In this document: piece after piece, positions 4,994 to 62,996 of the stretch
How positions within the stretch are numbered: the stretch's first letter is position 1
How the letters are laid out: every line of letters begins with the position of its first letter
From: Iphione sp. A-MEVVRFRX5
Taxonomy: Eukaryota
Assembly (NCBI GenBank): GCA_976226885.1
Contig: OZ320316.1
Span: forward strand, 62,930,001-62,994,000
Length of the DNA: 64,000 nucleotides
Direction: 5' to 3'
Made by a program: the position numbers and the translations under genes
The notes under the pieces: model-generated
Databases searched by the model: none
Told to the model about the DNA's origin: nothing
What the model saw: only the letters and a program-made list of their open reading frames with translations

Positions 4994-5008
4994 TGGCGGC
5001 CTTTGATC
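4994..5008 (+). promoter_or_regulatory. Candidate composite TCF site (helper + HMG)
   Basis: TGGCGGC (rc GCCGCCA helper) abutting CTTTGATC (CCTTTGATC with the shared C). Confidence 0.35.
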
Positions 5009-7096: not shown

Positions 7097-7255
7097 NNNN
7101 NNNNNNNNNNNNNNNNNNNNNNNNNNNNNNNNNNNNNNNNNNNNNNNNNNNNNNNNNNNNNNNNNNNNNNNNNNNNNNNNNNNNNNNNNNNNNNNNNNNN
7201 NNNNNNNNNNNNNNNNNNNNNNNNNNNNNNNNNNNNNNNNNNNNNNNNNNNNNNN
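7097..7255. other. Assembly gap (N)
   Basis: 159 N. Confidence 1.
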
Positions 7256-10200
7256 ATATCCTTGTTGCCTTGGATCTGCTCCCCCGCCGCCTGGGCAGCA
7301 TGTGTAGAACTGATGGTTGTAACTGAATCGTCCTCTCGGGTTTGGCTTGGAAGAGCCCTTTAACTGCGTGGAGAAAAGCGAGACGTTTTCCACAGGTGTC
7401 TCTGGTTAGTGGTCACTGGTGGGGAAATGATGGGTCGCCAGTCAGAGTAACTGCAGACGTGCTTCTGTCCGTCTAGTTTACCACCCAGGATTGGTTTTGT
7501 GCCATTTAAACTGCCAGTTAGAATTCCATGTACTCAGGTCCCTAATACCCAACGATAACCATCCCCCCCATCCCACCACCACCAGGGACACACGTCCTCA
7601 CTGCAAGATTGAACCTACTGTCAGGAAAGAAGATACTTAAGTACCACGACTAGCAAGTATATGAAGCAGGTTACGTGTGCTTTTGATATGGGAAGATCCT
7701 TAGCCAGGGCTGCTTGGTAGTGGGAAAGTTGGGTCTGATGTTAGATACATAGTAACACACCTACGCCTGCTGGATCGGCAGACACGCCCATAGCGCGAGT
7801 GTGTGGCAACCAGGCGCTGTTGTGTGGCTTCCACGAATGTCTCCCAGCTGGGTCGCGTCTTCTAGAGAGGTTGCGTTCAGAACTCCTCCAAAACACAACC
7901 AAAAACATTCATTGCTTTAAAAATCATGGTTTTCTTATCAGTCGGGTGTGCAACAGAATACACTGGCGAATTCCGATATCGCCATAGGCGCCAAGTGAAT
8001 GGGTTGGTCGGAGTCGGTCACCCGTAAAGGCACCCCCCTCAGGCCCTGTGCTGATAGAGGAAGGGCCCACAGCATGTGCCCTGACCCCGTCCCTGGCCGT
8101 GGCTGGGAATGACTGGGAGTTAGATCATTGTTCGAATAGGAGAAGACCCCTCTCTCCTTCTGCCTCTATTTCGCCGTGATGAATATGTCACAAGACATGA
8201 TGGACCGCATGTAGAACCTTCGGTTTCAATTTTGTCCTAGCCCGCTCCAGAAACATATAGAACAGACTGATTAGACTATGCAGGTTAGAACGAATACAAA
8301 AGGTTGACGTTGTTGCGGCGGGGTTGTAGATATTTGGGATTAGAGCATTCGGAAAGATCTGAACGTTTCAAAAGAAGGCCGATGTGTGCGTCGATTAAAT
8401 CCTTACCCCGCGAATAGTGGGGAGCAATTATAAAGGCCAACTTTATCCGTTTGGCTTAAAATGCCGCCGTATCCGGTCCATCTACAGAGCTAATTTGTGT
8501 TAAGGATTTTACTCAGCCGGACGACGCTCTCTATACATTTCATTCCGGCTGGCAATCCTGTCTTATTAAAGGTCATTAGTGTACGTAGGTGTGTGGGCGT
8601 GTTCAAAGTTAGGTAGGCGATAAGGTTTCTGTCGCTCTCCCTCCTTGTCTAGGGGGTGACTTTTATGTCTGATTTTTTTAGTTGGAGCTATTCTGTCTCG
8701 AATAGTCGTCCGCAAGTTTGCCACTTGAATCCTGTAAACACCAGTAGCTGTTGTAGATCTCCGGTTTGTTTCCTGTATCCACACAGTGCGGTGGTCTTCA
8801 GTTCTCCTGCCGCCTTTTTATGTGATCAGTGGATTTTTCCGGTTTATACTCACAACTGGTATGGAGGTCAGTATGCTGGCAACAATAAAGGGAAGGAAAT
8901 CAACTGAGTTGATTTAATGACTGCTATACATAGTTGTGGCAGTCAGTCTTTCTAATAAGTACACGTCTAATATACGACCTCGGGACGATGTATAGTTATA
9001 AACTATATACAATGTACACTATCTCTACCTGCTTGTAATTATTATAAAATCTTCATTTATAAATTGATGATTTGTGACCCACCTTAAAATAGATGGTATT
9101 TGACATCAATTTTTGATAACTGGAGACATTTTTAGGTAACGTTCTAAAAATAATATCAAGCAGTCCCAATATCTAACCCAGTGTAAGTTGGTCGCAAAGC
9201 AAAATTTCGATCAAATATATACATAAATGTATATTTCATTCGATGGTGTTCATTTCTAAATTCTCAGATACCAAACATTTTTAGGATAATCAAGCAGAAA
9301 ATGAACACGTCCTTTACCTGTTAGTCGTATTTTTATTAGTTTAGAATGCAGCACTCTTTCAAATGCTATTAAATATATACCTATGACTTTGGCCAAATCA
9401 TTGCGACTTTCCAGGATGGAGTCACTTTGGGCAGTTCGTTGAGCTGTGGTCAGTCGAAATCAAGAGGGATGTTTATTATTAGACAGCAGCCTACCAGACC
9501 TATACCGGTCTATCACAGGGCTAATCCTGGCCGTATGTGGCACCAATAAAAATGTATTGATTCAAGAACCAGCCATAGAGACGCTATCTCTCAGTAATTC
9601 ACCCACTTTGATGGTTTAGTTGTAACGTAGTCAAACCATAACACCTCAGTACACGTACACCTTGGTTCCTGTAGCTGAAAAAAGTAACGGATGTGGCGTT
9701 GTAGTTAACAACGCCCTCAACAGTCTTGAGGTTATTGCAGACAGGCGACAGACAGATTTGCCTTCAAACATTGACCAACACATAACAAATTCTCAAGAAA
9801 AATCATCACAGAATATCAAGAAGTATCAAACGACAGTTATTATGTATACATGTACATATGTCATCGTTATGACGAACATGCTTGAAGCTCTTCCGTGCGC
9901 AAATTGTCGGTACCCCTCTAACGGTAGCGATGATTACGAAGTGGATGTCATTTGAGGCCCGTATACAAAAATAATACGTGTTTTCAAATCTATGGCCCGA
10001 CACATCCACCCATACAGTTGATACCGAGTTCTGTCTTCAGTGCTGAGCTGTTCAAGCCTATGCAAGTAATGCCGAAGTATGGCAATGCTAACGGAACTCA
10101 AATTCCAAACCATGTCAGTCTTTTAAAATAGTTTCGCACGTCTTCATCTAACTGGGCCATTAGATTGAAGTTGTAAGATTAAAGGGTGTAAGAAGTGAAA

Positions 10201-13200
10201 TGTTTCCTCTGTATATGACAGTCTCGAATACGGAGCCATCAACAGCAATAGGAGCCTGAAAATGTGTGTCAGGCATTAGATGTAGATGTGTAAATGGCGG
10301 GAGAGCTAGACGGAAAAATAGAACCAGAGAGAGCACCGCCACCCATTTATAAAGCTTTATAGTCAACCTTTTCTAAAGATCATATTTCTCGCTTATAGGT
10401 CGGGTCTCTTTGGGTTGTCAGTCATTCCGTAGAATGGCGGCTTTCATAGGTAACAGCGCTTTTAGCGAACGCATTAAAGGTTTATCCAATCTGTGCCCAG
10501 TGACTTTCAAAGCGCCGTGGGTATTGAGAAGGGACCAGCTCAGTGCCTTTCATGCGTGCATTTGTTGGGGTAACTTGACTCCATGTCTTTCAGAGGTTCG
10601 CAGTGTCTTTTGACGCAGACGACTTTTTAATCGCGGCGTAGTCTCATAGAATGGCGAAGAGTGGAGGTTTTCCGTGTCCAGTTTGAGTGAATTACATGGA
10701 CATGCAGCGAGACCGGAGCCTTGCTCATGTACCTCACCGCTCAGTCGACAATCAGTGGCCGTGCATGTGGCACAGTGGGAGCTCTCGTCCCATTATAGAA
10801 CTCCACATTCAGTCGGCAGAAAATAAGTTATTTTTTACTATGATACTTTTTCTGCTTCAGACAATTTTAACGTCTTCCAGCAGAAATACTGTACCGACAG
10901 AAATGGAATGCGTCGTGCGTCACAGAGCAGAAGAGAAAGTTTGAAGCTCCTTACGATTGACAGCCAATTAAATTTCTTGCGTACAGTTTTATTCTGTTTA
11001 TTCTGTTTATTTTACAGCACCACATATATGCAATAGCAAACTGGACAGTACGTGATGGCTCCCCTCCACTAGGTACTGGGGAACAGCAGGAATGCACAGG
11101 ACATAAAGGTTCTTGCTTTTACTGCTCTACAAAGTATTGTGTTACTCCCTGCATTTGATAAGACGGTTGAAAAGGGAAAGAGGATCCCATTCATCACGAT
11201 ATTGAAGCGAATGAAGGAGGAAGTCCTGTCCTTGAACCCGATTTTACATCACCATCTTTTCAATAGCTTGAGTGTAATAACGTTGTCTGAATTGTAATGG
11301 CCACGTTACATAAAGGGAAATACACTTAGCTTTGATAGCGTTAGTGTCGTTGGATTACAGTGTTCACGTTTCTACATTTTGCGATAGTAAGTCGAGACTT
11401 GAATATATAAACAGTAAAACTATTAGCTGGCCTCATTCAGTTCGGGTCGCGTTAGTGATTGTAGCATGTGTTTTTTTTGTAGTAAAGAGTCCGTCCGTTG
11501 GACCCCCTGCTGTTTACTGTTGCTCATCACTTCCAGACACTGCGCTTATTGCCTCCATACTGCACGCTGGGGCAGCCGGAACAGTAGGCGGGGATTCTGC
11601 CATGGGAATCAAGAGGGCACACCGTACATTGACCTATGCCACTCAGCTAGTAGACCAACAGGAATAGTAACAAGTGATTTCAGGCAGTCATGGATTCTTG
11701 AAGAGTGACTCTGATTTCACCTAATATAACCAAAATTGTCGGGGGTGGGGCGGAGGCTAGTTATCTGGACTTATGTAGAGGAAAAGGAAAGCAGTGTTAA
11801 CATCTTAATATTACCCTCCACTTTATGCATTATGCTTACCAAAACAGTCAGATGTTCAGTGAATTTTCCCCCTGGCGTTCGTGTTGACACCTTCACTTGT
11901 ATCGATTAAAGTGACATCGTTCTGTATCAGAAGGTCGCGTTTTGGTAATTCTGGATTTTGTAACCCCTTTTACCGTGAACGTAGTTAGGACCTACGGACA
12001 CTCACTACCCAAGACATGTGTGCGTAAAACGCCGATGACTCGAAAAAGGAACCTGCTACAGGGTCCAGGTATAGCGAGGTCCCCTCAATAGCGTCTGATT
12101 AGCTCCCATCAACAGCTCGATATCGAAGAACTTCTTTTTTCATTTATCATTTTTTATATTATTTTGTACGGAGCATGCTAACATTGAAAGGGGAAAAGGA
12201 CCCACCATTGGGTGCATAAGTATTTGCCCATGTACCTTGCGGGCCGCTTAATATATGTCTGGCGGGCCTAGAAGTTATATGTAACGTCAGTCAGTATTAT
12301 GTGGTGTTAAGTATTAAGCGAGTTGTGCAATGTTTACTTGGAGGAATTATCGGTAGAGCATCGGATGGTCCCAAAGCAATTATCATGATTATCGATGTAA
12401 TCTTCGCGACAGTTAGCACATAAACATGTACCGATCTCCATCGCTTTGGTCGTCTGATTTCCTCGCTCAACCGTACCACGCAATAAACAGACTCCGCCTT
12501 TGCACCGATTGAGACCCACGAGCATCAAGCGTACATTCCACACAAACAGGTCTTTCTTCCTTGATTTTCCATATTTCACCGTACCATGACCCTCTGATAG
12601 TATATATTTATTATGTATATATATGTACTAAATATAGAGAAAGGTTGGTATTCGATGTCAAGCCTCGCTGGACGACCCGAGCTGTAATTGTTCTATTAAA
12701 TTGTTAAATGGTCGCTTTAAATAAGAGTTTATTGCTGCCCCGATAAGCGAGCCCTCTAGCGGTGGCGGTGTGCGGGTGGGTCCATCAACTGTCATGGCCC
12801 TGACACTAACGGGTGGTCACTAATTTGAAAGTCAGCCCAATCAGAGCATGTCCTGTAGCATGGGTGCCCCGTCGGTCACATAGAGTTAATGACAGCTAAG
12901 CTCATTGTGCACTTCTGGGTAAAATCGATGGGCAACATGCAGACGGGCTTTCACCATGGCTGACATCGTGCGATATCTTCAACATGTCTGGCACACCTCG
13001 GCATCTCTGACACCGGACACCCAGTGTTTCTAGTGGCTTTAGAGGTTCTGTTTGTTTTTACTCCCAAAAGTATTTTACACAGCGTCCATGTTTTTTTTTA
13101 TGTAGGCGGAAATTTGTGCCTGGGAAGGTAGACAGACACGATTAGGACCAATATATGCAAAGAAATTTGTATTCATTGCGACTCATCTGAAGTTATGAAA

Positions 13201-16200
13201 ATATATGCAAGTCGATGGGATGCTGCTTTCTTTGAAGCGAGTGGGTGGATATGTGATGTGAAAGTACGATATGAGTTTCTTCAAACTCAGTCGTCATGAA
13301 AGTGATCCATGAGGGGGAAAAAACTCGACCAGCATACGAGAGAACATACCAGAGCGGCTTTGGCGGGAAGCAGTGTAAAACACTGGAAGTTCAACAACAT
13401 GCGCCACAAGCTTAGCGTATTTTGTTATTCACGTACGTTCCCATGCGAAACAGGCGTCCCACAGCGCATAAAAGTAGCTAGAGGAGGGAAATTCTAGGAG
13501 AGTCTGTCTTCCTTTCACTCTGGAAAATTCCAGTTGTTTGCTGGTATGTATGTAAAATGTACATGCTACGGTCCTTGGGTCATTTTTGCCCACCAACAAC
13601 AGCAAAATTGTCAACTGTTCGTTTTTGATGGTGTATACAGGTACATATATACGAAGTCGGGGATTTTAATTGTACATACAGCTGTTTAGATTTTGATTGA
13701 TCTTTAAGATATGATGGTTTTATTGGATGTTTGGATAGATGGAGGTTGGTGGGGAGGGGGGCAGGTTTGACCAGCGGTGGTCGTGTGATCATTGATGGGT
13801 TTTGAAGGTACCGTACACTGCGGCGACATTTTCAGCATTGGCCAACATGTCCGACAGGTGCCCACAGCACCGCACTCATGCCGGCTCATTGAACCAAACA
13901 AGGTTGTTGATGAAGACCAGACCTGGCCACTACACCTCCCTCCAGGGCCGCATTCAGGACTGCATATAGCAGCAGAGATGGGAAGCTATAACCCTGAAGC
14001 CGCCGGACGTCAGTTGACTGAAGGCCGCGTGAAGGGGCTTCCCGGAGACTGCGCAACAGCTTGCTGGCTGTGCTCTATTTTAGTTTTTATTTGAATGAAT
14101 TTTGTTTGCTTCTTGGTTTGTTTGCTTGTTTTTTATCTACCGAGATGCTTTATAGATATAGGGGGCGACTGTGGAGGTGAGTAGAGAGGGGGAAGGGAGG
14201 CAGAATTAGCACTGGTTGTTCGATATATCATGCAGCCATCCTCCCGCTTTGTCCTGAAGAGGATCTAGTGATGTCTGTGAACGCATGTCAAGACTGCCTG
14301 CGACCAACTAATTGCCCGGCATGATTACCATTAATTAGTGGGATTAGACTGCCGCTTAGTGAATGACTTCCCTTCAGGCGCATTGAGCGCAAACAGAGGC
14401 ACATTAAATAATTCTTTATTTTCTTGTTTAAGTAGGTGGTTTATGTCTGTGCACTCAGTACCAACAGGTATGTTGGCCATCATACACCAAGTGTGATTTT
14501 TGTTGATTTCCATTATGAATACGGGGGACACTGCTCAATTTTCTTCTCGACTCGGAATAAACACACATCACCCATTGGGGGAGAAGTACTAGAGGTATTA
14601 CTTGTAAGAATTTAGTCTTTGATGATCGCGCGCCTTCATGCATGCTGACAAACAGATTGTCGTTAGTCTGTGTCTTCTCTAGTGGTGGCTTTACAAGGTA
14701 GAGCAAGGGTAGAGACACTCCCCTGGTAGGTATACTGGCGCCAGGCTGTCTCTTGGTGATGTCTAGACGAGCCCGCCCTGTGTGCCAACCTACAAGGGAC
14801 GGCTTTAACTTCGAACCCAATGACGCACAGTGAGCATATTACACGTACCGTACATATACATACTAGAGTCATTTGGTTTGATGGCGACGGTTGCAGTTTC
14901 GCATATGTTCGCACTTTCCCTAACCCAGGTGAACTGTTTGCATCTCCTCCACCAACCCACCCACTCACCCACCCAGCTACAGCCGTCACCACCGCCTTCC
15001 CTGTGGGGTAACTGAGTAAACACAGTGGGCCTCTGGGAACGTGTGCAAATTTCTCGAATTTGTGTATGGGAACTGTTCAGGAATGGAGCCTTTTAGTCAA
15101 GGGTCTTCTCACACCACTGGTACCCACTAGTCTCTGATAAATCGGTATCTAATAAAACACTATTGTTGTGTGGTCTCTGCCGGATACCCCCACGGCGACC
15201 GTCATTGAGACACCAGAGGCACTGCACAGTGGTGTCGTCCGTGGTGGAAGGCATTAATGGAGTCAGAGCACCAACGGGCTGGCCGTGAGGGCCGGTGCCT
15301 CCAGTATCTCTCTGGTTGAGGCCCAGTTCAAAAAGGGCCGAACAATGGCGGCACACTGGACACAAATCTTGTTAACTGCGTGACAATGGGTTTAGCATGG
15401 TCCTCGTAGCTATAAAGTCCGGAGGTTGGACGGAGCAAAGCAAAAAAGCACACCTTAGATTTTGGCCTTACCCTGGGGGGTTTGACTGCAAAGGAAGGTT
15501 TCTTTTAATTTGTCTCCTTAGTTAATTTCCTCCCCAAAGGCATTCATTAAGGAGACGTACCTTCGACCCTCCTTTAACGTGAGCGGTCCATAGGAGAAGC
15601 CTAAGCTCAGTAGCTCCACATAATGACAAGAACACAGTGCATGTGACGCCGTCCGAAGTAAGTAATCTCCGTGTAGGTTTCACCGATGAATCACGAGGTC
15701 CAATATCTGCCCGGTGTGTTTGGTCAGGCGTACGGGTAAACACACAGTGAGAGTTCTGCTCATACTCTATAGCTGCAAGGATTGCATTAGGTCACGAATA
15801 GCTCAGAGCAGCCAGGTCTGAATTAATCAACTCATATCAACTAATGTACCATGGTTGACAGTGCTCTAGACAGTAGTTGATGTGGCCTCTTACCGAGCTG
15901 CTATACGTAGTAAGGGTTTATTGGTAGTAGAAATCAGTTCGCCTTTGCTTTCCCAACCTCCCTGTAGATATCCTGGAAATAATTGCTTATTTCCAAGGTG
16001 ACTACTGGTGTCACTTGTTTGGTAATCATAATATACTCTATAGTGGTACAGATCATTACTAATGTGGCATTCCCTCGTGACGGCAAGGGGCACGCCGGCG
16101 CGATGTGGTGGTGGTCTCTTGAACCCCCCCCCCCCCTCCTCCGCCGACAAAGAGGAGGTCCCCTCCCCTACCTAGCAGACGTTTATGCCAGTCGGTTCTG

Positions 16201-17491
16201 TCAGGCTAGTCTAGGCATGCCCGACCGAGCTGTAAGTGCCCCCTCCCCTCCCTAGGCGCCCAGGTATGCGCACCGAGAACAGGTATGTATATAAGACAGG
16301 AAACTTTGTAGACCAAATATATATGGCTTCCGTCGATTCGAGTGTGAATAGCGTGTCCCGACTAAACAATATGAATTGTGTCGAGTGAAAATGTGCTGAT
16401 TCGATAATTTATGAAACAGATGACACCAATTCAACTGTGCTCTAGTCAACGGAGTGTATACCAAGACGGACTGTATAGAATGTGAGATTTTCATGATTGA
16501 CAGCTGTTTTTCTTTTTTTTTTTTTAATTCGAACTGTTTGACATAATCAGGCGAATACAGCTGCCAGGTAAAAAGGTTTCCTCGATGAATTTTCAAAGGG
16601 ATTCGCTTTGGGTTTTCTAGAATTACTTCCACCCGCTCGGGGCTTAGCTTCATTGTTCGTCGCTCGTTAACTATACAGTCGTTTGTCCTAAACTGAGCAC
16701 TGTCACTCAGGGTCGCAGCAGGCCACGCCCTGTTACACGCCCCGTGAGAGTGATCCGCGGCAACTTCAAAGGACTCCAAGGTGGTTTACCTTCCAAGGTT
16801 TGCCACCCGCATTGGGCCAACTGACACCCCTGAACGTTGTTCCTTGTGCGCCGTGGCCCCGACGTGTGATTTGATGATACGTCTAGGTGTACGGCGGTTA
16901 TTTCCCCGGCTGACTGTAGTATAGCTGAATTTATCCTTGTGGTCCATTGCTGGAGGGGATGGGAGCGTTAGCCATTTCGTTTTTAGACCGAGGCGATCAA
17001 AAATGCTCTTGACAAGAATGAGAAAAAGCCTCTACGAATTAAGTTAGAAGTTGTAGCTGGAGGCTACAATAACGCCTCCTAGTGACAAACTTGTCAGCAG
17101 AGAAGCGAGCAGCGTAGCTCGGCCGCCACCTATTTCTAAATTCATAAGTCTGGCCGGTGGAAATGACAGGGTGCTGAAGAACACCATGTCCAGATGTCAG
17201 GGCTGTCCATTGGGTCCTTGTCGCACTCAGCACGGTGCCTGATGGCAGTTTGTCCATCATACTTGTGTAGAGGGACAGTCCCACGCTCTAAAACCACTGC
17301 CCTGTAGGACGATCTTACCGACCATCGATGGCTTAAATCTGCAAGGAACCATGTCTGTGTGAATCTGCTTTCTCTTTTCGATAAAATGCATTCGGAAAGA
17401 GGGTTAACCTTCACTTGTGTTTTGTTTTTAATCGCTCATTATTACTGTTCACTGTTTAAATTAAAATGATTTAGGCAACACGTTAAAGCTA

Positions 17492-17515
17492 TTTTTCTTC
17501 TCCTTTCAGGTAAGT
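17492..17515 (+). other. Candidate recursive splice site RS2
   Basis: 16/16 pyrimidines tttttcttctcctttc-AG|GTAAGT; AG at 17508-17509. Confidence 0.72.
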
Positions 17516-20447
17516 TAACGCTGCCAGATCGTATAGAGTGGTCCAAATCAAGCGAAGGTAATTGCTATTTTTAGTACAGACGGAGAGGGAAAATTCAACT
17601 CGGCCTGAAAAAAAACAACATATTTTAGTGCAGTGTCAAATGCACAACATACCATGGGAAGGACGACGGTGCTTTGCCCTCACCATTATTTCAGGGAGAG
17701 AATGTTAAGGCCTGTCAGCGAGTGTTATTTCAGCAAATCATCTGTATGTTCTCCTTATGCTCGTGGCGTTTATGGCAGGTCACTGTGAAGTTTGAGTGCC
17801 ACTTATGTTTTGAAATAAGTAGGATTGTATGTGGCTGTGCTTCCCTGGTTAACAGTTCTAGACAAACTATTTGTGCAGTTATGGTCCTTACCTTTGGGAG
17901 GAATGAGCTGAAATATTCCCGACAAGGGCGGTCGCAGGAATGTTAATCTTCAAATCATTATTATATTTTCACCTGGGCCAGTCGTAGTGCTCGAGATTGA
18001 CCAAAGAACTGCATGCTTACCGATGGCAATATTTTTCATGGGCCAGTTTTTTCTTCGTTCCGACTCATAATTTGAGCACATCACTTAAACTGGTTAGACT
18101 TTCTAAAAGTAGATAAGTTGCCATGTGAATGATATATATTAAGTACAGGAATATTAGCTTTCTCGTGAAGATTAAAATTGTTAAAAACAGGGGCAGTTCT
18201 TTCCCAAAGGGTGCATTGGTCGGACCACACCTCCTTTTATGGCAATAACTTGCTGTGCAAGAATGCGAGTAAATGCTAAAAGAGTTTTGATCGTATCTCT
18301 ATAATTACAAGTCGTTATTATTATATTTTTGTAGTGCATGGGTGCCACAGAGATAAATCTTGATTATCTTTGTCTTTTTTGGTTGAACAATTACGGTTCA
18401 TTTTTGAAATGATTTCTTCCTCTTTACAGTACATGATCTGCGAACATTTTCACAAGCACATGGAGATTATGTTTCAGTAGAAATAACTCTAGCCATAAAT
18501 GATCGAAATGTTTAATATTAATGGCCCCAAAATACAACAATTCTGTTGCTAGCATCTTTCTCTTAGTGAATGCTTGTCTCTCAGATAGCCATATTCTCTC
18601 AGCTATCACTTATCTTTTTGCACACATGTACTTTTGATGGTTCTACTTGCAACTAATTTTTAGAAATTCATTCTGGTAATCATCCAAAAATGAACGGGAA
18701 TAGCGTCTATGGCCGGCAATTCAGTTTGCCTCACACGAGACGTCGAAAAAATATAAAATATAGAACACCTTTACTCCCCTTGTACAATACATGTACTATA
18801 GTGATGTTTTGAATTAAGGGTAAGGGAAGGCAGCGCTATTAGAATTGATCGCATTCAAGAGTTGAAAGATGATGCGTGAAAAGACGTGTACAAATATCTT
18901 GTAACACACACCATCTCGGTGTACGTTTGCACACAGATCGCTGTAGCAAAAGAGAAGGAACGACGTGCGTGTGACCTACTGAACCCAAGCGACGTGGTAA
19001 AGGTGGATGAGTTACCCTCGTGTACCTTCAGGTAAAGATCGATACTTTCCTGCAGGTACCGAAGTGGCGAACAAAGTGTTACTGCTGGTAGAGAGACACG
19101 GGTGACGCCATCCTTTCATTCTTGTCTATCGGTTGGCTTAGCTAACACACCTTGCCCCGCAGGGTTACGGGCTGTGAACACGCCTGACGTGCCCCCTGAA
19201 CAGACATTTTGCTCTTTTGTTCTGTGTTCTTTGGCCACAGCGTTTCGTTACGTTGGCATTGTAGAGCTGCCGCTACAGGCATGACCTGGCAGAGCAACAG
19301 AGAGCAGAATACGAGGCACCTTAAAGGCCAGCTCACTTCAACCCACTGGCCGAGGCTAGTGATGTTTAAAACGCACTCATTTATATTGGCATGACAGGAG
19401 ATGTAGGGATTATTTATGCCTCATAAATTTATATACTGCTTAGTAGGGTGGTCTATGACCTTATGCCCGCGGTACAAGTCCTATTTTAAATTGACGTGAG
19501 TCCTACGTGATTCTACTTACCTCAACTCCAAAACCCATTTCAGGTACAATAGTGTGATCACAGAACGCCACAGGGCAAGAGCTGAAACGTCACTACATGT
19601 ATATCTTTCTGGGACCATATGAAATTTTGTCCGTCTCCGTGCTCCGCTGCTCACAGTAATAGCATATCATATTTGCATTTCCAAATATGAACACTGTTCA
19701 TACTTTGAACATTAGGTGGATTTTGGAATGCCTTGTCGCTGCGTTCTTTCCACCACAATAGAATATGGACTGTGTTTCTCTATGATATGAGAGATGTAGC
19801 ATTCTGTATTTCCCTGTTGATTTTATGGAGAATGAGCTTCTGATACTTTCACATTCTTGCACACTGACATAGACATGTCTGTCATACCCCACCCTTAACA
19901 ACCTGCTTATCCTTCTCCAGCTACCTCACTTACCATAACTTACATTACAACTGTCAGTGAGGAGCAAGGGGCGTACCCTGTGCCAGGCCATGGTCTGAGG
20001 CCTTCTCATTAAGCCTGGCGAAATATTTCGTGTTTGTGAGCACCAGTGATACATACAAAACCCTCCCTGTCTAATGCCCCAGTGGCAAAAAGAGAAACAG
20101 ATGGAATCGGCGTGTCGGATGTCATACAGAATACTCTCAGCGCCTCGTACATCTCAGGGCTTTCGAGGACGTTTGGCTAATTCAGTGCATCCTGGCAAAG
20201 AAGGTCTCTTACTGGAAATCCGAAGATATACGGCAGGAACGTGTTTGCAGCTCCTGTTTTTTTTTCACTTTGGGTACGTGTATATCACGATGCTGGGCCT
20301 GTGGGTGTGAATTTCAGCAGCTCACACAACGACTGTCTTGATACTGTTGAAGCCGCCGTGGGAAAAGCCATAACGTTCTAGTGAGGGATCAAGATAGAGA
20401 TTCTCTAAATATCCAGACTGGTAGTCGTATACCCTCATGTGTCTATC

Positions 20448-20657
20448 NNNNNNNNNNNNNNNNNNNNNNNNNNNNNNNNNNNNNNNNNNNNNNNNNNNNN
20501 NNNNNNNNNNNNNNNNNNNNNNNNNNNNNNNNNNNNNNNNNNNNNNNNNNNNNNNNNNNNNNNNNNNNNNNNNNNNNNNNNNNNNNNNNNNNNNNNNNNN
20601 NNNNNNNNNNNNNNNNNNNNNNNNNNNNNNNNNNNNNNNNNNNNNNNNNNNNNNNNN
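20448..20657. other. Assembly gap (N)
   Basis: 210 N. Confidence 1.
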
Positions 20658-23600
20658 CACACCAGCAGCTAGGACGGCACGGCTGGCTGAGTTTTCTGGG
20701 TTTATCGTAAGTGTAGTCCTCTCTAGGTCCACGGGTCCGACCTGTACCTGTGCACACATATCTGGCGGCCACATCCTGACGAAACGGCTAATCCCAATGA
20801 CAAACACAGCCAGGCATAGAGTGTTGGGCAGACGGAACGAACAACTTGGCAAGAAAACCGGGACACATTCTGCAAGCATCTGGATCGCACAAAAGCTTCG
20901 GTTCCGTGCCTGCTGAGTAATTAAGACCTAAATAAACGTACATTTTTGGATGTATGTAATTAGATCATTGCTACTCGATCTCTACACTATTTGTCACCCG
21001 GTAATATATGTATTCACGGCATGGCGCGAATCGTCCACTATGAATAGTAATGATCATATTGTGCATACCCCCAATCTGTGTTGGACAGCAGTCCCAGTAT
21101 GCGGGTGACACATTTCATGACTAACTGTGAAACTACTGCACGTAGCACTCCTCACTGCATGTCTTGTCACCGCCTCTTTACTGTCATGCTGAAAACTGGT
21201 GTGCGTACGAAAATGAATGCTTCAATCATGAGTGTGGTATATAGGCCCCGCCATATGCCGAACATTTGTCTTGTACGACTTTGGGTAGGCAGGCGGGAAG
21301 GTCACTATGCTTGTAGAAAATGTTTAATAGATAGGTAACCCTGCATTACCAAAGTCATCATGTCATTGGTGGTAAAGTTAGATAGGTCATCGCTATTTTT
21401 TCACGGGGGTGGGTGGGTAAGTAGCCAGATCAGTAGGTTACAATGTATGCTGTGCCTGCATGTACATTAACATTAGTAGGAATGGTGATACCCAGTACCC
21501 TGGTTGGCAGGTTATTGCGTATGTTGGTGTGGGATGGTGGGGGTGGGTTACTTAGTACATTCGAGGATTTATCATCAGCGTACCCATATAGGCCGTCGTA
21601 GTCATAGTAAACTATATTAAGTTAACGAGCAAAGGAAATGAGCTCAATCTTTGTACCAAGTTGCTATTAAGTGCTATAGAAGGAACATTTATTTTTCTTT
21701 ATGCCAGTCATTCTTGTGGGCATATATATTTCTGAACGTCTACTTTCAGCCTTCTTAAATTAGTGTCTCGGGTCGCCAATTGATTGGCGAAAGATTCCGA
21801 CTGTAGTCTAGTACCAATAGATTGTCGAAGAAGAACACGAACGGCAGCTACAGGTCTTGGACCTTTTTGCGTGCGTATGCTATTTATTCTTAGCGACGGG
21901 GAATACCTAACATTCTGCTAATCCATCTCGCCAAACCTGCCTGTTTGTGCTAATCAAGAATGACATGCACCACCAACAAGGCCCTAGCAATGAAGCATAT
22001 TTTTATGAGTTGGTTAATTATTCCATATTGTCACATAACACATTCCAGCCGGGCTTGAAGTAACAGATACAGGCGAGAGACATCGTCGTTGATCATCCCT
22101 GATTAATGGCTTCAGAGGAGGACCCTTCGACTTCAAAACATCTTCCATGAAGTTACAAGAAAATCTTCACACATACATATTCCGTAGAGTCGTTTCCAGA
22201 CCTAAATCCAAATCTTGATGAGCGATGTTACAGCTAGTTGCCTCATATTAATGCAAGAGCCCCTCCCCCTCGTCCTCCTTTTTTTTGACGGGAGGATCCC
22301 AATGTACACATGAATGTAGATGAAATAGTGCTTGTATATCTTGTAAGGGTTAATATCACTGGGCCAGTGTTGGGTGGCACGCGTTGCGGGGTGTCCTCCG
22401 GGATCAAGTGTGCCTCGTTTTTCAGGTGAGAACAGTCACCTATGACGAGTCCTCTACCTCATCCATCAAGTTGTCCTCTCTTGTGGGCCCGTTTAATGTA
22501 TGGCTCCAGTCTAATCTATATTGGCGCAGCGTCACAAATACTTACCTTTATCTGTCTCTTCTGTGAAACGGAGGGCATCAGAGGCATGTTGTCAGCTTAA
22601 GGCACGACCAAGCCGTCGGGCGCCCCTGATAACTTATGGCTTCACATAGTGGAGATGGGGACCAACGAGTGGTCTCTTGTCTCCTTCAACCTCTCCCCCA
22701 TCACCATTTACCGCCCATTGGCGCATAATCTCTGAAGGGACTCTTCTTTTGAGGAAGCCGTTTCTTTTGGAAATCATCCGTCTAATTATTCACAGCTCAG
22801 GAATCAAATGAAAATGATAAGATTCTACTTTGTAAAGTAGCCCCTCCCCCCGTTTTAGTGGGCTACAAGAAAGGAGAAGACCCGCCGTTTCGTTCGCTGA
22901 TCACATCGGGATGTGACCCACATGAAAACTTGCATTTTGCAGCGGGTTTTCGGAGTTACGACCCTGTCTGGCAATTCGGCGCGAACATACCGAAGTAAAG
23001 AGTAAATGATCGTATGTGTACAGTTACCAGCATTAACAAATTGTCGCTACTTGATGAAGATAATCCGCAATCGATTGTTTTTATGTCACTATCGGGTCGA
23101 ACAAAACTACTATGTGACACTGAACATTCGATTGCAGTACATCAACGATTGCAGGAGGGTGCGCCTCTGACATAAAGGAGCCATATCGGAAAGTGATGCG
23201 TTTCATATGAATTTGCAAGTCAAAGCTCCTATGACATTATTCAAGTAACCGTGGCTATAAAAGGGTGGCCTCACCTTAAAGGGCCTGTGTACAAGGGCTT
23301 TCGTTCGGTCCCGCGGTGTATGAATGTCAACAGGCAGAGGTTATTTGTTTAACCAGAACCATTGTTGTCACAGGTTTTGTGGTAATTCTAGTCAACTGAA
23401 CTCCAAAGAAAACAAATCATTCAACCGTGAAAAGTAAGAAGAAAATTCCATTATAAGAGAAGGTTTATTTTATTTCTTTTCTTCATTGAAAGAACAAGCA
23501 AAGAGGTCAGAGAAGTTTAGAGTGGCTTTGAGAACAGCTAGTAGTCTACGAAATGCGGAATTGGACGTTTCTTCAACCGTTTTACCAGGCACATGCGCTA

Positions 23601-24584
23601 AAAAGAATAGTATTTGACGAATATCGGGGGACGTGGCAGGTGGCCGTGATCTCGACTAATGCCCTCAGCCCGGCGCAGACGACATTCATTGAACGAGGAT
23701 CCCTTCATCTGGGTCATGTTTGCACAAGTCTATGCATTCCGCTGGTTCTGCACCACTGCCTCGGCCAGGACCTCCTTAACATTGATATGATAGACTATCT
23801 AATGGTAAAGGTATGGAGTGTACTCCCGAGTACAGGCGCAAGTGGAAATGTGCCGGCATAGACGTGGGCGACTGGATTTGGATGTGAAATACAATATTCG
23901 TGTCAACAGGGGGCGCCATGGAATCCTGCTTGAGTAGGAGAAGCAGCGTGCTGTCTGAGGCGCATCATATCTCTGGGGCCTCCAGAAAGGGAATACAACT
24001 TTTCATGACAGTTATGCAGGTGTTGAGCGTGGTGTGAGCCCTGTGCTATGACTCTAGAATTATCTTGTCAGATGTGTGCAGGAAACTGCTTCGAGATGTT
24101 GATTTTAAATTGTGAAACCTGATATTTGCGAATGATTTAGTAGCATTTTGCTCGTAGACCCAACGTAAAGGGAGTATTGTATAAATAATAAGGCCCCTAC
24201 ATTTACCTATTGGTCAGCCCGTTCTGTGACAGTATTAGTTCTCATTTGAAGCTCTCAACTCGAGTATTTGCTTTCGATGGAGCGGTGGCCTTTGGTGAAA
24301 AAAAGAAATAGCTGCATGCCTCAGAGGATTACCAGCATATGAAAGCACGGCGTCTGCGTGTCTGAAATATTACCCATTACTTGACACCTCCAAGTACCTA
24401 CTAATACAAACGTACGGAAATTTAGCTTGTTACTGAGTTTATAATTGGATGTAGCCTTCACAGAGTCAAAGATTACCTTCATACCTTCCACAAGTATTTG
24501 TAACCGTGTTTTCCTGCCATGGGGCAGTTGGGTCTTTCTAGATATGTTTGTGTGTTTCTCACACTTTCCCACAGTGTGAATTAA

Positions 24585-25168
24585 GGCTGGGTTTCCATGA
24601 AAATTTGTAGGTGTGTTTGCATGTTTGTAAGTGCATGCTATGTCCTATGTTTTCATTGTATTTTCATGTTACGTATCTATTCACGACAATAGTCTCCCCA
24701 AAACACACTGCAAACTTGTGCCACTTTCATGGCAGAATTGGACAAGTCCCATTCTGGAAACATGGAGCACAGATACATGGAGCATGTGTCACGGCCCAGA
24801 CCTATGTGGATGCACACATGTATATTCACGCATTAAAAAACATGCTGCAAAAACACCTACACAGCACATGCCTACAAGCTTACATGAAAACCCAGCCTAA
24901 GGGCCTCTTTCCATGGGTACACTATGCACACATGGGGAGGCTGATGATATTATAGTACCTATGGATGTTCATACATGTCCTGTTCTGCACTGCTACACAT
25001 CGCAGTTCGGGGAAACTGGACTACTCACCGATTGATCCACATGTCACATCCTGCAATGTGTAAACTACACACACATGGGTAGGGTGCTGTAAAATGTATA
25101 CTCTCGTTTGTCCCACAGTCCCAGCTCTAGATACATATGCGTAAACTATGTAAACATGGAGAGAGCCC
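24585..25168. mobile_element. MITE, Kolobok- or Harbinger-like
   Basis: TTAA on both flanks (24581-84, 25169-72); imperfect TIRs ggctgggtttccatg / catggagagagccc; non-coding interior rich in CATG/CACAT. Confidence 0.5.
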
Positions 25169-28100
25169 TTAAGGGTAACTACAAAAGCATGTTCACATAT
25201 GTAACAAGGTTGTCATTAGTGTTAGAGGAAATATGTCGTTGTGGATATTTCATTCGGTTTGGTGCCTATTCCTAGTGCAGACGTTTCCACATTCCCCCTT
25301 CAAGTGTCATTCCCCATTCAACGACAGATGGAAATTAGATACATCGCCATATAGAATTTCAGTTTTTTTGCCCTGTCATAATGACAGGCAAGCAGCATCG
25401 GATCACAAGCCTTCATGGAACAATCAACTTCCGACACAAATGACATACTGAGGCAGTGTAATACCGGTATTGTTGTCTAAGATGTCAGCAGAAGGTCGAG
25501 GTCTCGGCAGGAGAACAAGGTAGATACCTGAGGCAGGTAGAAATAATGTCAGAGAGGGGTCGCCCCGAATACCGTGGTTCGGTGTATGGTGACAGCATGT
25601 GCATTATTATTTATAATACCGGCTCTTCTGTTCTCTGTCATAGAATGAGGTCCGCTCCATGCAGTACTAAAGCACAGTCGTCGCGCATGCAGCCTTGTCC
25701 TTTTACAAGACCACGGTTTTTTTTTAAGTAGAAGGTCATTTCACAAGCAAATTTTAACTAATTGTGTCAGGGGCTCGGATATGAAAAGGCAACATTCTCT
25801 GTTGAGCCATGTAATCCGTCTATAGGAAAGTGACTCTGAAAATAGGCGGAAAGCCCCCGCAACAGATCTCCAATGTTGCAGCAGAGGATGATGTGCTGGT
25901 CAGATTATATCGAAAGAGAGGGACGATGATATGGATTGATGTTCCGTTTCCCATTCATGTAAACACCTAGATCAAAACAGAGGCCTTGCGACTTTCACCA
26001 CGGTCGTTCCAATCTCATGATCCTTTTAACATGCAAACACCCATTGATTTGTTTATGTGCATGTAGATAAAAAAATGGTTGAAGGTATTGTGCCTGTCGT
26101 AACCTTCCGTGGGACTCCAAACGCAGATAACCGTTTACTAAGTAATATCAGGTAAGGCACTATCATAGAAAGTTTCTTTCATTGTCATTTCAAAGGCAGG
26201 GAGGCCTGTGTTCATCAAATGTCATCTTCCCATCCATGGTTGATAGTGGAGAAAAGTGTGTTGCCCACCATCTGTTAGTGTCGGCATTTTGCTTGACCAT
26301 TATCTATTCTCATCTGTCACACAGGTCGTAAATGGTCGTGAAAGAACCATTGAGATGTATCTGTATATTAGGTTAAATGTATCTGGCATTCTTCTCCTTG
26401 GAAAAAAAATTTCACGACACTTCATTTTAACCAGTTTATTTTTGACAATATAAATTCCTGTACTAGGCAAAAGTTGTCAAGCAACTGTGTAGACATACAC
26501 ATTTTATTTTACTGACATGTTCCTATCCTTTGCTTAGAGATTTAGTTGTTCTTTGAAGTAAAGTGCCCTGCCCTGGTTTCTATTATTTATTAATAAATTG
26601 CGTCAACATGTATTCCATATACATGTACGTGTATATTTACTATAGATCTTGAAGGGAAGGATGGTTACATTTCTACAAGGCATAATTGCTGGTACTTTTT
26701 AATAATTTTCGACACACTTTTGTGTGTTTGATCAGAATCAAGCATCCTACTGATTATATACATGGAGACCTGGTTTGGATTTGTCTCAGAATGCAAATCA
26801 AAGAAACAATTATCAAGAGGAAATGACGAGGTCGTAAATCATTCTACCCTCATGCAATGCCGTCTGCCATTTTATTTTGCTCCAGTTCTCTCGGTTCTTG
26901 CAGTGCAGGGAAAAACTCCACAAACGGAACGAGCTTTCTATTTTGCTTTTGATTTCTTTGATCTTTTTTTCTAGTTTATAGTGCATGTTCCTCATCCCTG
27001 GTCGAACAGAACTCTTTTATCGCTGCATAAGCGAGCTGCTCTCCAGGGCAGTCCCCCTGGGCAGATATTTGACCCCTCAGAAGGGTTCTGGGCATGTGCA
27101 GGGGCACCGACGCGTTGAACACTGCCAGGACTCGCCGTTACTTTCAGCTCCGGTTTCCCGGCCTGGTTAATTGGAATCAGGCCCCGGCTACCAACACATA
27201 CACATATGTATTCTCTCGACGGTTCCAGAGGCAGGGCTGCAGGGGAGTAGAGAAGAAATGCGGTCAGGGAAAAATAGGTACAATGTAGATCTTTACCAAT
27301 AAATGGCAATCTCCAAATAATCATAATGGGATGATGTCGTTTTGCAATTAACATCGCTGTATCTAGTGTCCTCGTCAGTAAAACACTATACACAGACCAT
27401 GTTTTTAATTCCCCCCCCCCTACTCCCCCGTACGCCCACAGAGATGCTATTGTTGTGCCCCATGTCTGTCTGCGTGGTTAGAATTCATTCAAGTTGGCAT
27501 TCTCGTGCGAGGGCGCACATTTATCGCAGCTGTGTTTTCTGCTTCTTTTTAAGAGCCTTGACAATTTGTACTGCGAGTGGTCCCCATAGATCCTCCTGAG
27601 AAAAACTCCACGTGAGCTATGGCTGTAGGAGGACGGCGACTCTAATGGGCTCTCTTGCACCTTGGGCAGTAGACTTAATGCCAGGGTGCGTGCCTTATTA
27701 TGGTCCACCCGGCACAAGAAGTGACTTCGTCAGACGATGCCTCTTGCCAAACGATTAACTTGGCAATTGTTTCTGATTGCCGAACCCTACGGCAAAGGCA
27801 AGGGGTCCTGATGAGCAGATGATTAAGACTTTTTCTACACCCGTGTGACTTCTTTTTTGTTTGAGATTCAGTTTTCCAGCAACTGCATGCATCTTCTACC
27901 ATCGGAGTTGATCACAAGGTTGTTACTGTTATAGTAGGACTAAGCTTATAGGAGCAGTGGAAAGGGGATCGTTGTATTACACCCTGTTTGTCCTCATCTT
28001 GGATGAAGAAATAAAAAAATATCCTACAGTAATAGGTATACTACTCTGAGTTCGCCTCCACACCTCCCTCAATGGGTTTATTTTGATGCCATTTACAGTG

Positions 28101-28870
28101 CACATTACAATCCCCTTCTTGCCACATTCGCTGGGTGCTTTACCTCTCTCAGCTGTAAGTGTGATATACATGTACGACGTAAGACGTACAGGATTTCAAG
28201 GCGGTGATGCTGACTCACGATATAGCACTTCAGAAGTCGGCTCTGAGTTTGGCAGTTGGGAAGACAGCCGGCCTGTTGGAAGATGAGTATGTTTTGTCGC
28301 TGGCGAAGGTCTGCTGGTCGGAGTTGCCGCCTCCTCTTGGATGTAGCGGCCTCGGTCACGACAGCAGCTCCCCCTGGGGTCGCAGAAGTATAACCGACGA
28401 CACGCCGTCTTGGCAGCCTTCATCTAGAGGCAGGAAACGGGAAGTTGAGGGTGTCATTCAGGGTCAATAGAGGGCCCTAGTAGAAATTCGTCGGAGGAGG
28501 CAAGCATTTCGCTACCCGATGTCGAATTTCCCCTTTTGGTACGCGAAGATAGCGTTTTAAGGTCGGAAACGGCGAGGAAAGAAAGAACGATGAAATTGAC
28601 AGAAGATGTGAGTTTTTAAAATTTCACGCAGTTATAAAAACCGGATTCTTAAAAAGAATTGGGCCATCACATGGCAAAGGTTAGCCCCGTTCAGTAGGAG
28701 AACTGAAAGACTCGCATGTATATGTGAAAGATCCCAAACCACACTTTACTCGATCCCTGCTGGTTGCCATTCTGCTATAAAATGAAATTGAAAAGAGAAC
28801 GTCCCCACCCATATCGTCCGCTAGATAGCTATAATAATTTATCAGGGTCTTCGAGTCAAGTAGTGGTCTC

Positions 28871-29230
28871 ATGGATGAGAAATCTCTTTTCACTCAAAAT
28901 AATATAAGGAATAAAAAGTTTTTCAACAAATTGGTGGAAGTATGTTTATATAACAAAGAACAGCTCATTCATGTAGTAGGGAATTTCACAACAGTAATGG
29001 ATCGAATGCATTAGAAGCCAGCAGAAATGATGGGGCGTGCATAATTATGTGCAAAAATATGATGAATGACAAAATGTTTTGGGCCGTTTGGGACCATTAA
29101 CCGACGTACATACATAATTGTACATGTCTGGGATCGCCCAGTACACTTTTTTTAAACTTCAAATGGAAGGACGTGGAAGTTCTGTCCTGTGAAAGTAATT
29201 TCACGTCTAGTACTACTGAGAAGGATCCAT
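28871..29230 (+). pseudogene. Decayed L1/Tx1-like APE endonuclease fragment
   Basis: 28871-29014 reads MDEKSLFTQNNIRNKKFFNKLVEVCLYNKEQLIHVVGNFTTVMDRMH*, resembling N.YAPN...FF..L.....I.GDFN.V.D. Frameshifted QYTFF and SRL remnants follow. Confidence 0.45.
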
Positions 29231-30351: not shown

Positions 30352-30659
30352 GGGGTTGTTCACATATAACCGGATTTGTCCGTTCCGTGTCTGCACATGG
30401 GTGTGGATATTTCTCAAGCCCTCCTATACTATTGAAAGCATTCACATATGTCCGGACATTTGTGCATCCGTGTGCAGACATGGAATATGAACCCATTGAG
30501 CATGGGTTTTGTGTGCACCTGAACGCGGATTCTTATAGACACAGTGGTTAAGACACAGCTGTAGACCATATGGAACCAATTAATGTTCGGACACAGCAGG
30601 GTGTTTCTCCGTGTCCACACAGGGCCGGATTTTTGGTCAGGCTGCATGTGAAAAGCACC
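30352..30659. mobile_element. PIF/Harbinger-type MITE
   Basis: TTA TSD (30349-51, 30660-62); 11/14-matching TIRs ggggttgttcacat / atgtgaaaagcacc; internal CCGTGT repeats. Confidence 0.58.

Positions 30660-32200: not shown

Positions 32201-32201
<1 letters not shown>

Positions 32202-32236
<35 letters not shown>
32202..32236. repeat. (TA)n microsatellite
   Basis: Directly visible. Confidence 0.97.

Positions 32237-32242
<6 letters not shown>

Positions 32243-62910: not shown

Positions 62911-62914
<4 letters not shown>

Positions 62915-62992: not shown

Positions 62993-62996
<4 letters not shown>

What the first reader, a model, noticed from the sequence alone, without database searches (positions are those of the whole stretch)
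17492..17563. RS2: consensus-perfect ratchet point with a stop-containing 48-nt RS-exon
Seen: 16 uninterrupted pyrimidines, then AG|GTAAGT, a full-consensus donor. The next donor is GAAG|GTAATT at 17557/58. The intron is phase 0, so inclusion reads GTA AGT TAA, an immediate stop, even though 48 nt preserves frame. This matches the known poison character of RS-exons.
Basis: partly seen in the sequence, partly recalled or inferred. Interest (0 to 1): 0.7.

Follow-up and report, generated by a model that had tools for sequence, protein, structure and literature searches.

The report
Probable recursive splice site, Dachsous intron
A 78.7-kb intron of an invertebrate Dachsous cadherin gene holds a perfect intron-end signal fused to an intron-start signal, one of three such sites on the gene's strand, so the intron is probably removed stepwise (recursive splicing), though no RNA data could be examined.

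Summary
The stretch is single-copy in the 1.18-Gb genome.

I mapped the host gene. It is a 27-repeat Dachsous orthologue on the + strand, closest to brachiopod Lingula. Its first coding exon lies 37 kb upstream of the window, and the next exon starts at 41579. The intron between them is 78,707 nt and phase 0, and the site sits 54.6 kb into it.

Of 2,113 AG|GT sites in 528 kb of strand sequence, the three best acceptor-plus-donor composites all lie on the sense strand of this intron (4032, 17509, 36154). About 0.003 are expected by chance.

Genome-wide, the strict motif is no commoner than a reversed control. It does form strand-consistent clusters: 7 close same-strand pairs against 0.13 expected.

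The same intron is long in Lingula, scallop, Drosophila and Anopheles. In flies it carries a conserved ratchet-like site with a 47-49-nt cryptic exon.

No RNA run was listed and no close relative was available, so use of the site is inferred, not shown. The scan has flagged similar sites elsewhere in this genome.

Verdict: probable recursive splice site, a new member of a known kind.

The parts
1..41578 (+). 3' part of the 78,707-nt phase-0 intron of the Dachsous-like gene. The intron starts 37,129 nt upstream of the window, at G000:C10:62,892,872.
   Evidence: Exon 1 donor CTTAAG|GTAAGC is at L003:2871/2872. The exon 2 acceptor is at 41578/41579. The two exons are colinear without a gap with Lingula, Drosophila, Anopheles and Argopecten Dachsous. 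A cadherin HMM finds no exon between them in the DNA held.
17483..17487 (+). Candidate branch point TTAAA, with the A at 17486, 24 nt before the exon start (inferred).
   Evidence: The true exon-2 acceptor (CTGAT, -27) and RS3 (CTAAA, -27) have the same spacing.
17492..17507 (+). Polypyrimidine tract of 16 uninterrupted pyrimidines.
   Evidence: Acceptor score is 14.6, against 15.4 for the gene's real exon-2 acceptor.
17508..17509 (+). AG of the recursive 3' splice site.
17510..17515 (+). GTAAGT, the 5' splice site regenerated after ligation to exon 1 (AAG|GTAAGT).
   Evidence: The regenerated donor scores 12.0 against 10.9 for the real exon-1 donor.
17510..17557 (+). Putative 48-nt cryptic RS-exon.
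   Evidence: The length fits the roughly 50-nt cryptic RS-exons described in Drosophila (PMC8605326).
17516..17518 (+). TAA stop in the reading frame carried over from exon 1 (phase 0).
   Evidence: frame-0 translation VS*.
17558..17563 (+). GTAATT, the weaker 5' splice site that closes the RS-exon (GAAG|GTAATT).
   Evidence: It scores 8.1. Donor-like sites of this strength occur once per 944 nt in the intron.
4011..4106 (+). Sister site RS1: ttctatttcag|GTGAGT (AG ends at 4032), with a 68-nt cryptic exon closed by ccag|GTAAAG at 4101.
   Evidence: composite 24.2, third best of 2,113.
36133..36224 (+). Sister site RS3: ctctttctcttccag|GTAAGC (AG ends at 36154). Downstream donors lie at +64 nt (weak) and +202 nt (strong).
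   Evidence: composite 27.8, best of 2,113.
41579..41765 (+). Coding exon 2 of the Dachsous-like gene (rest of cadherin repeat 6).

Best explanation
Window 17492-17563 is a recursive splice site (ratchet point) with a short cryptic RS-exon. It is the second of at least three such sites that subdivide the 78.7-kb intron between coding exons 1 and 2 of a Dachsous orthologue in a protostome, probably lophotrochozoan, animal.

Inferred mechanism:
1. The 48-nt unit 17510-17557 is defined as an exon. U2AF/U2 bind the Y16-AG acceptor, with a branch point near 17486, and U1 binds the downstream donor GAAG|GTAATT.
2. Exon 1 ends in CTTAAG. Either directly, or already joined through RS1 at 4032, it is ligated to 17510. 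This removes 54.6 kb of intron, or 13.5 kb if RS1 was used first.
3. The junction recreates a full-consensus donor, AAG|GTAAGT.
4. That donor outcompetes the weaker GTAATT donor, so the next reaction goes from 17510 to RS3 (36154) or to exon 2 (41579). It removes the cryptic exon with the rest of the intron and leaves no trace in the mRNA.
5. If the weaker donor were used instead, 48 nt would be included with a stop at the third codon. That gives an unproductive or truncated message.

Shown here: the motif, its uniqueness, the gene model, the intron length and phase, and the statistical excess and strand bias of such sites. Inferred: every splicing step.
For: - **Motif and copy number.** The motif sits exactly as described. 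It is single-copy and not expected by chance in the window.
- **Host gene.** It is a 27-cadherin-repeat Dachsous orthologue on the + strand.
- **Intron.** Exons 1 and 2 abut without a gap in alignments to four orthologues. The intron is 78,707 nt and phase 0.
- **Composite scores.** Of 2,113 AG|GT sites in 528 kb of strand sequence, the three best acceptor+donor composites (27.8, 27.1, 24.2) are all on the sense strand of this intron. The next best (20.6) is the real exon-2 acceptor. The antisense strand and 200 kb of upstream DNA hold none.
- **Chance expectation.** Markov simulations expect 0.003 such sites per 41.6 kb.
- **Independent origin.** The three sites share nothing beyond the splice signals, so they are not duplicated copies.
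- **Cryptic exons.** RS1 and RS2 each have a donor of score about 8 at 68 and 48 nt downstream. Such donors occur once per 944 nt.
- **Donor competition.** The regenerated donor (12.0) is stronger than the RS-exon donor (8.1). This is the condition for skipping in flies (PMC8605326).
- **Genome-wide clustering.** Y12-AGGTAAGT sites form 7 same-strand, non-identical pairs within 100 kb, against 0.13 expected. The reversed control forms 0 (my arithmetic).
- **Orthologous intron.** It is long in Lingula, Argopecten, D. yakuba and An. merus. In three Drosophila species the top AG|GT composite of the whole locus is a conserved sense-strand site in that intron, with a 47-49-nt cryptic exon.
Against: - No RNA evidence of any kind: none was listed for this stretch, so no junction reads, lariats or sawtooth profile could be examined.
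- No close relative was available, so conservation of the site is untested.
- Genome-wide, the strict motif is not more frequent than its reversed control (56 against 67). A lone instance could therefore be chance, and under the strict pattern this site is a singleton.
- The splice-site scoring matrices were approximate ones written from general knowledge. The 11/11 cut-off was chosen after seeing the data, although the rank-based test has no threshold.
- 20 kb of the intron's first half could not be read.
- Argopecten's orthologous intron has no such site.
Confidence: 0.65

Rival explanations
1. Chance occurrence: a pyrimidine run happens to precede AGGTAAGT, and the spliceosome does not use it.
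For: Genome-wide there are 56 Y12-AGGTAAGT sites against 67 for the reversed control. Most isolated instances therefore need no function. There is no RNA or conservation evidence.
Against: The site lies on the sense strand of a 78.7-kb intron, together with the two other best AG|GT composites of 528 kb scanned, with 0.003 expected. It also has a correctly spaced downstream donor and a candidate branch point. A site this close to consensus inside a transcribed intron would be hard for the spliceosome to ignore.
Confidence: 0.15
2. A regulated poison or alternative cassette exon (17510-17557), not an obligatory splicing intermediate. Its inclusion would terminate the frame after cadherin repeat 5 and down-regulate Dachsous or yield a truncated secreted form. 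The fused GTAAGT would be incidental or a fail-safe.
For: The in-frame TAA is at the third codon, and the exon has both an acceptor and a donor. Expressed RS-exons exist in flies, and vertebrate RS-exons act as poison exons in some contexts (PMC8605326; PMC6224609, abstract).
Against: The regenerated donor is clearly stronger than the exon's own donor (12.0 against 8.1), which predicts skipping. Three such units in one intron fit stepwise removal better than three separate poison exons. About half of random 48-nt stretches carry a stop, so the stop is not evidence of design.
Confidence: 0.12
3. The signals belong to another transcript, such as a nested gene, a long non-coding RNA or an alternative terminal exon, rather than to Dachsous pre-mRNA processing.
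For: The intron is large enough to hold other units. In Anopheles the orthologous intron holds a small Kazal gene.
Against: No open reading frame with family matches lies near the site. There is no Rfam family. No AATAAA occurs within 2 kb downstream, and the only ATTAAA is 660 nt away. An ordinary exon would not need a consensus donor at its very first base.
Confidence: 0.05

Closest known systems
Drosophila intronic ratchet points with cryptic RS-exons (Hatton 1998; Burnette 2005; Duff 2015; Joseph 2018; Pai 2018, PMC6110457; PMC8605326)
   Same: A (Y)n-NCAG|GTRAGT fused acceptor/donor lies deep in a long intron on the sense strand. A short (about 50 nt) cryptic exon is closed by a weaker downstream donor. 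The ratchet donor is stronger than the exon donor. There are several sites per intron. Inclusion would disrupt the message.
   Different: The host is not an insect: its Dachsous is closest to a brachiopod's. Use of the site is not shown by RNA. The cryptic exon keeps the frame (48 nt) but carries a stop, whereas fly cryptic RS-exons are described as generally out of frame.
Vertebrate recursive splicing through RS-exons (Sibley 2015; Blazquez 2018, PMC6224609)
   Same: An RS-exon is defined first and a 5' splice site is then reconstituted. The RS-exon contains a premature stop if included. The host is a long gene for a cell-adhesion molecule.
   Different: Vertebrate long introns show little sense-strand enrichment of such motifs (PMC2773006). 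Here three near-consensus sites lie in one intron, with none on the antisense strand, which is the invertebrate pattern.
Computationally predicted RP-site enrichment in large introns of invertebrates (Shepard et al. 2009, PMC2773006)
   Same: Sense-over-antisense excess of fused donor/acceptor sites in introns over 50 kb. It was reported for fly, mosquito, bee, beetle and sea urchin (ratios 4 to over 20).
   Different: That study had no lophotrochozoan and named no Dachsous site. The density here (3 in 58.7 kb held, about 5 per 100 kb) exceeds their fly figure of 2.2 per 100 kb, though under different scoring.
Ratchet-like site in the orthologous intron of Drosophila dachsous (seen here, L024:17129, L025:17377, L026:15888)
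   Same: Same gene and same intron position (after the exon that ends in cadherin repeat 6). It is the top AG|GT composite of the locus, on the sense strand, with a 47-49-nt cryptic exon closed by GTRAGT.
   Different: Flies have one site about 13 kb into a 40-kb intron. Here there are three sites in the second half of a 79-kb intron. The sequences are not alignable beyond the signals. I could not confirm that the fly site is a published ratchet point: ds is absent from the S2-cell tables of Pai 2018, and the Duff 2015 paper is not held.

Membership tests
Intronic recursive splice site (ratchet point) with cryptic RS-exon | Juxtaposed consensus 3' and 5' splice sites, (Y)n-NCAG|GTRAGT | tested here: met
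   Y16-CAG|GTAAGT at 17492-17515. The composite score is second best of 2,113 AG|GT sites.
Intronic recursive splice site (ratchet point) with cryptic RS-exon | Lies on the sense strand inside a long intron of a transcribed gene | tested here: met
   It lies 54.6 kb into a 78,707-nt intron of a + strand Dachsous orthologue.
Intronic recursive splice site (ratchet point) with cryptic RS-exon | Ligation to the upstream exon regenerates a functional 5' splice site | tested here: met
   Exon 1 ends CTTAAG, which gives AAG|GTAAGT with score 12.0.
Intronic recursive splice site (ratchet point) with cryptic RS-exon | Downstream 5' splice site defining a short RS-exon (about 50 nt in flies) | tested here: met
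   GAAG|GTAATT lies 48 nt downstream and scores 8.1. Such donors occur once per 944 nt.
Intronic recursive splice site (ratchet point) with cryptic RS-exon | Regenerated donor stronger than the RS-exon donor, so the RS-exon is skipped | tested here: met
   12.0 against 8.1 by a simple position-weight score. This is a score only, not an assay.
Intronic recursive splice site (ratchet point) with cryptic RS-exon | Splicing intermediates: exon-to-RS junction reads, RS lariats, sawtooth read density | not testable with these tools
Intronic recursive splice site (ratchet point) with cryptic RS-exon | Evolutionary conservation of the fused acceptor/donor motif | not testable with these tools
   The closest Dachsous available is 54% identical in exon 1 (Lingula), so the introns are not alignable. 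Only analogous sites in the orthologous intron of flies, mosquito and Lingula were seen.
Intronic recursive splice site (ratchet point) with cryptic RS-exon | Not part of a dispersed repeat | tested here: met
   One match in 1.18 Gb, no local repeats, and the three sites are unrelated in sequence.
Dachsous (Ds/DCHS1) cadherin, the host gene | 27 extracellular cadherin repeats, one transmembrane segment, and a cytoplasmic tail with a cadherin-type motif | tested here: met
   HMM hits account for 27 repeats across the exons. There is a Pfam Cadherin and CADH_Y-type_LIR match in the last exon. It is colinear with named Dachsous proteins. The Atlas cluster is 'Dachsous-like'.

The most novel reading that the evidence does not exclude
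The giant intron that splits cadherin repeat 6 of Dachsous is an ancient protostome feature, long in brachiopod, scallop, flies, mosquito and this animal. It has been handled by recursive splicing since before these lineages split, and this genome keeps a chain of three ratchet points. If so, this would be a first lophotrochozoan case, and it would tie recursive splicing to one conserved intron across phyla.
Probability: 0.15. Interest if true: 0.65.

Novelty: new member of a known kind. Interest (0 to 1): 0.45.

Why it matters
Recursive splicing has been shown experimentally in Drosophila and vertebrates. For other invertebrates there is mainly motif statistics, covering insects and sea urchin (PMC2773006).

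This site gives a concrete, single-copy, easily assayed candidate in a protostome outside the insects. It sits in a well-known planar-polarity gene, next to two sister sites. It also comes with evidence that such motifs cluster strand-consistently in several other loci of the same genome.

If RNA data confirm it, stepwise intron removal would be a general animal solution for very long introns. The Dachsous intron, long at the same position in five lineages, would then be a good system for asking whether ratchet points are inherited or re-invented.

If RNA data do not confirm it, the finding is an ordinary intronic motif.

Tried and rejected
- **RNA evidence.** The look-up of sequencing runs listed no run and its cap is one, so read laying could not be used.
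- **Noncoding ORF as a handle.** I used a spurious 90-aa ORF beside the site (17674-17946) to fish the same region from related species. No candidate came back.
- **Rest of the intron.** Only alternate 10-kb pieces upstream are held, and 62,900,001-62,910,000 and 62,920,001-62,930,000 were not read.
- **Closer relative's Dachsous gene.** The representative search, the word search with Lingula Ds and local BLAST found nothing closer than 54% (exon 1) and 48% (last exon). Nucella Ds is not on record, and the Tribolium madens gene range is too long for DNA.
- **Is the fly ds site a published ratchet point?** No ds identifiers appear in the Pai 2018 supplements. Duff 2015 is not held. One paper mentions both terms, but only in passing.
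- **High-copy repeat or duplicated module.** Rejected.
- **ncRNA gene.** Rejected.
- **Alternative terminal exon.** Little support, as there is no AATAAA within 2 kb.
- **Vertebrate origin.** Suggested by the Atlas taxa, but not supported by the identity ranking.
- The N runs (7097-7255, 20448-20657, 40005-40199) were left as they are.

Full report
**1. The observation**

- 17492-17507 is tttttcttctcctttc, 16 uninterrupted pyrimidines.
- 17508-17509 is AG, and 17510-17515 is GTAAGT.
- The next good donor is gaag|gtaatt, with its GT at 17558. The enclosed unit is therefore 48 nt.
- In the frame carried from a phase-0 intron the unit reads GTA AGT TAA.

The pattern Y12-AGGTAAGT occurs once in the window, against 0.00 in 100 dinucleotide-preserving shuffles. 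A looser pattern also finds only this site, against 0.05 expected. The 301 bases around it match the 1.18-Gb genome only once. There are no local repeats and no Rfam family in the intron.

**2. The host gene**

The right-hand third of the window holds a run of + strand cadherin exons that ends in a large exon. That last exon has four cadherin repeats, a transmembrane segment and a cadherin-type cytoplasmic motif.

I built a cadherin HMM from the window's own repeats. It finds every exon from 41.5 kb to 59.9 kb and nothing in 1-41.4 kb. It also finds one large exon in L003, 37 kb upstream of the window. That exon starts with a methionine and a signal-peptide-like stretch, and carries repeats 1-5 and the first quarter of repeat 6. 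The exon at 41579 carries the rest of repeat 6. Altogether 27 repeats can be counted, which is the Dachsous architecture.

Named relatives are Dachsous/protocadherin-16 proteins. The closest is Lingula anatina, at 54% identity in exon 1 and 48% in the last exon. Arthropods and molluscs follow, and fish are more distant. The animal is therefore a protostome, probably a lophotrochozoan. My ranking fits the first better, but I did not identify the species.

**3. The intron**

- Exon 1 ends CTT AAG|gtaagc at L003:2871.
- Exon 2 begins cccttacag|GTG GCC at 41579.
- The two exons align end to end, without a missing residue, to Dachsous of Lingula (579/581), D. yakuba (632/633), An. merus (610/611) and Argopecten (579/581).

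They are therefore neighbours in the mRNA. The intron runs from 62,892,872 to 62,971,578 and is 78,707 nt long. The site lies 54.6 kb into it and 24.1 kb before exon 2.

**4. Is the site more than chance?**

I scored every AG|GT in all DNA held, which is the window plus twenty 10-kb pieces upstream, on both strands. That makes 528 kb of strand sequence and 2,113 sites. The score is a simple acceptor plus donor score.
- The three best composites are 36154 (27.8), 17509 (27.1) and 4032 (24.2). All three are on the sense strand of this intron.
- The fourth (20.6) is the true exon-2 acceptor, and everything else is at or below 19.2.
- The sense-strand intron is 11% of the sequence scanned. The chance that the top three all fall there is about 0.0014, before counting the score gap.
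- First-order Markov simulations of the intron give 0.003 sites of this quality per 41.6 kb.
- The antisense strand of the intron has none.
- The three sites share nothing but the splice signals, so they are not copies of one another.

The matrices were written from general knowledge and serve only for ranking. The tool's own shuffles give the same message for this site.

**5. Genome-wide view**

The strict motif occurs 56 times, 30 forward and 26 reverse. The reversed control occurs 67 times. The motif is therefore not enriched overall, and a lone instance could be chance.

The real motif is clustered, however. There are 7 adjacent pairs on the same strand, non-identical in sequence and within 100 kb:
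- C1:129.25-129.37 Mb
- C10:31.79-31.87 Mb
- C11:16.10-16.16 Mb
- C2:64.17-64.19 Mb
- C19:71.18-71.21 Mb

Random placement would give 0.13 such pairs (my arithmetic). In the control, every close same-strand pair is a pair of identical repeat copies. Fused acceptor/donor sites in this genome therefore concentrate in particular loci in one orientation, as expected if many of them are used. Earlier notes of this scan report similar candidate sites in other long introns of this genome, including two Fat-like cadherin introns under 1 Mb away. These notes are unchecked here.

**6. Anatomy against the known mechanism**

In Drosophila a ratchet point is a tandem acceptor/donor with a short cryptic exon of about 50 nt closed by a downstream donor. 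The ratchet donor outcompetes that donor, so the cryptic exon is always skipped. Weakening the ratchet donor causes inclusion (PMC8605326).

Here:
- The acceptor (14.6) is as good as the gene's real exon-2 acceptor (15.4).
- The regenerated donor AAG|GTAAGT (12.0) is better than the real exon-1 donor (10.9) and than the RS-exon donor (8.1).
- A TTAAA with its A 24 nt before the junction is a plausible branch point. The spacing matches CTAAA at RS3 and CTGAT at exon 2.
- RS1 has the same layout, with a 68-nt unit and a donor of 7.8. RS3 has weaker or more distant donors.
- Donors of this strength occur once per 944 nt. Two of three sites having one within 30-100 nt is mildly unexpected, at roughly 1-2%.

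The in-frame stop is real. About half of random 16-codon stretches have one, so it adds little.

**7. The same intron elsewhere**

The intron at this exact protein position is long in all four orthologues read:

| Species | Intron length |
|---|---|
| Lingula | 28 kb |
| Argopecten | 63 kb |
| D. yakuba | 40 kb |
| An. merus | 51 kb |

- **Drosophila.** In D. yakuba, D. simulans and D. rhopaloa the best AG|GT composite of the whole locus is one sense-strand site about 13-16 kb into this intron. It is tttatttcag|GTAAGT followed by a 47-49-nt unit closed by GTRAGT. It is conserved at 84-89% over about 180-230 nt.
- **An. merus.** The best composite (24.9) is also in this intron, on the sense strand.
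- **Lingula.** It has one site 1 kb before exon 2.
- **Argopecten.** It has none.

These are analogies, not alignable homologues, and I could not confirm that the fly site is published.

**8. What could not be done**

- No RNA run was listed, so there are no junctions, lariats or coverage profiles.
- No close relative's gene was obtainable, so there is no direct conservation test.
- 20 kb of the first half of the intron is unread.

**9. Verdict**

The rivals are a chance motif (0.15), a poison or alternative cassette exon rather than an intermediate (0.12), and a signal of another transcript (0.05).

It is a new member of a known kind. Recursive splicing is established in flies and vertebrates, and motif enrichment was already reported in insects and sea urchin (PMC2773006). 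What is new is the taxon, the gene, and the parallel with the orthologous fly intron.

Noticed in passing
G000:C1:129,248,027-129,517,708; C10:31,794,275-31,866,107; C11:16,103,310-16,162,134; C2:64,167,772-64,188,416; C19:71,182,433-71,205,233: The strict motif Y12-AGGTAAGT forms same-strand clusters of 2-4 non-identical sites within tens of kb: 7 close pairs against 0.13 expected, and none in the reversed control. These are likely further recursively spliced long introns. The host genes are unknown.
   Followed up: partly
L024:17100-17185 (D. yakuba), L025:17377, L026:15888: The orthologous intron of Drosophila dachsous holds a conserved ratchet-like site, tttatttcag|GTAAGT, with a 47-49-nt cryptic exon closed by GTRAGT. 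It is the top AG|GT composite of the whole locus in three species. I could not check whether it is a published ratchet point.
   Followed up: partly
L027:18731 (Anopheles merus); L022:30961 (Lingula anatina): In mosquito and brachiopod the best AG|GT composite of the Dachsous locus also lies on the sense strand of the same long intron. The scallop (L023) has none.
   Followed up: partly
L003:1096-2871 and window 41579; L022, L023, L024, L027: The intron that splits cadherin repeat 6 of Dachsous sits at the same protein position and is very long (28-79 kb) in five distant lineages. This suggests a conserved reason for its size, for instance regulatory DNA.
   Followed up: partly
window 44508-47333 (+): An intact 941-aa LINE ORF (endonuclease plus reverse transcriptase) lies in sense orientation in the intron between the cadherin exons near 44.2 kb and 47.7 kb. 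The region is AT-rich (GC 0.36). It is the subject of another first-reader note.
   Followed up: no
window 17510-17531 vs L024:17130-17151: After GTAAGT, RS2 and the fly site share nnACGCTG...GAT (9 of 16 further positions). RS1, RS3 and the mosquito site do not share it, so it is probably chance.
   Followed up: no
window 7097-7255, 20448-20657, 40005-40199: Three runs of N (159, 210 and 195 bases) lie inside the intron. None is near the site.
   Followed up: no
window 62860-63010: A long (CT)n microsatellite lies about 3 kb downstream of the Dachsous stop codon, followed by short tandem units that give repetitive ORFs.
   Followed up: no
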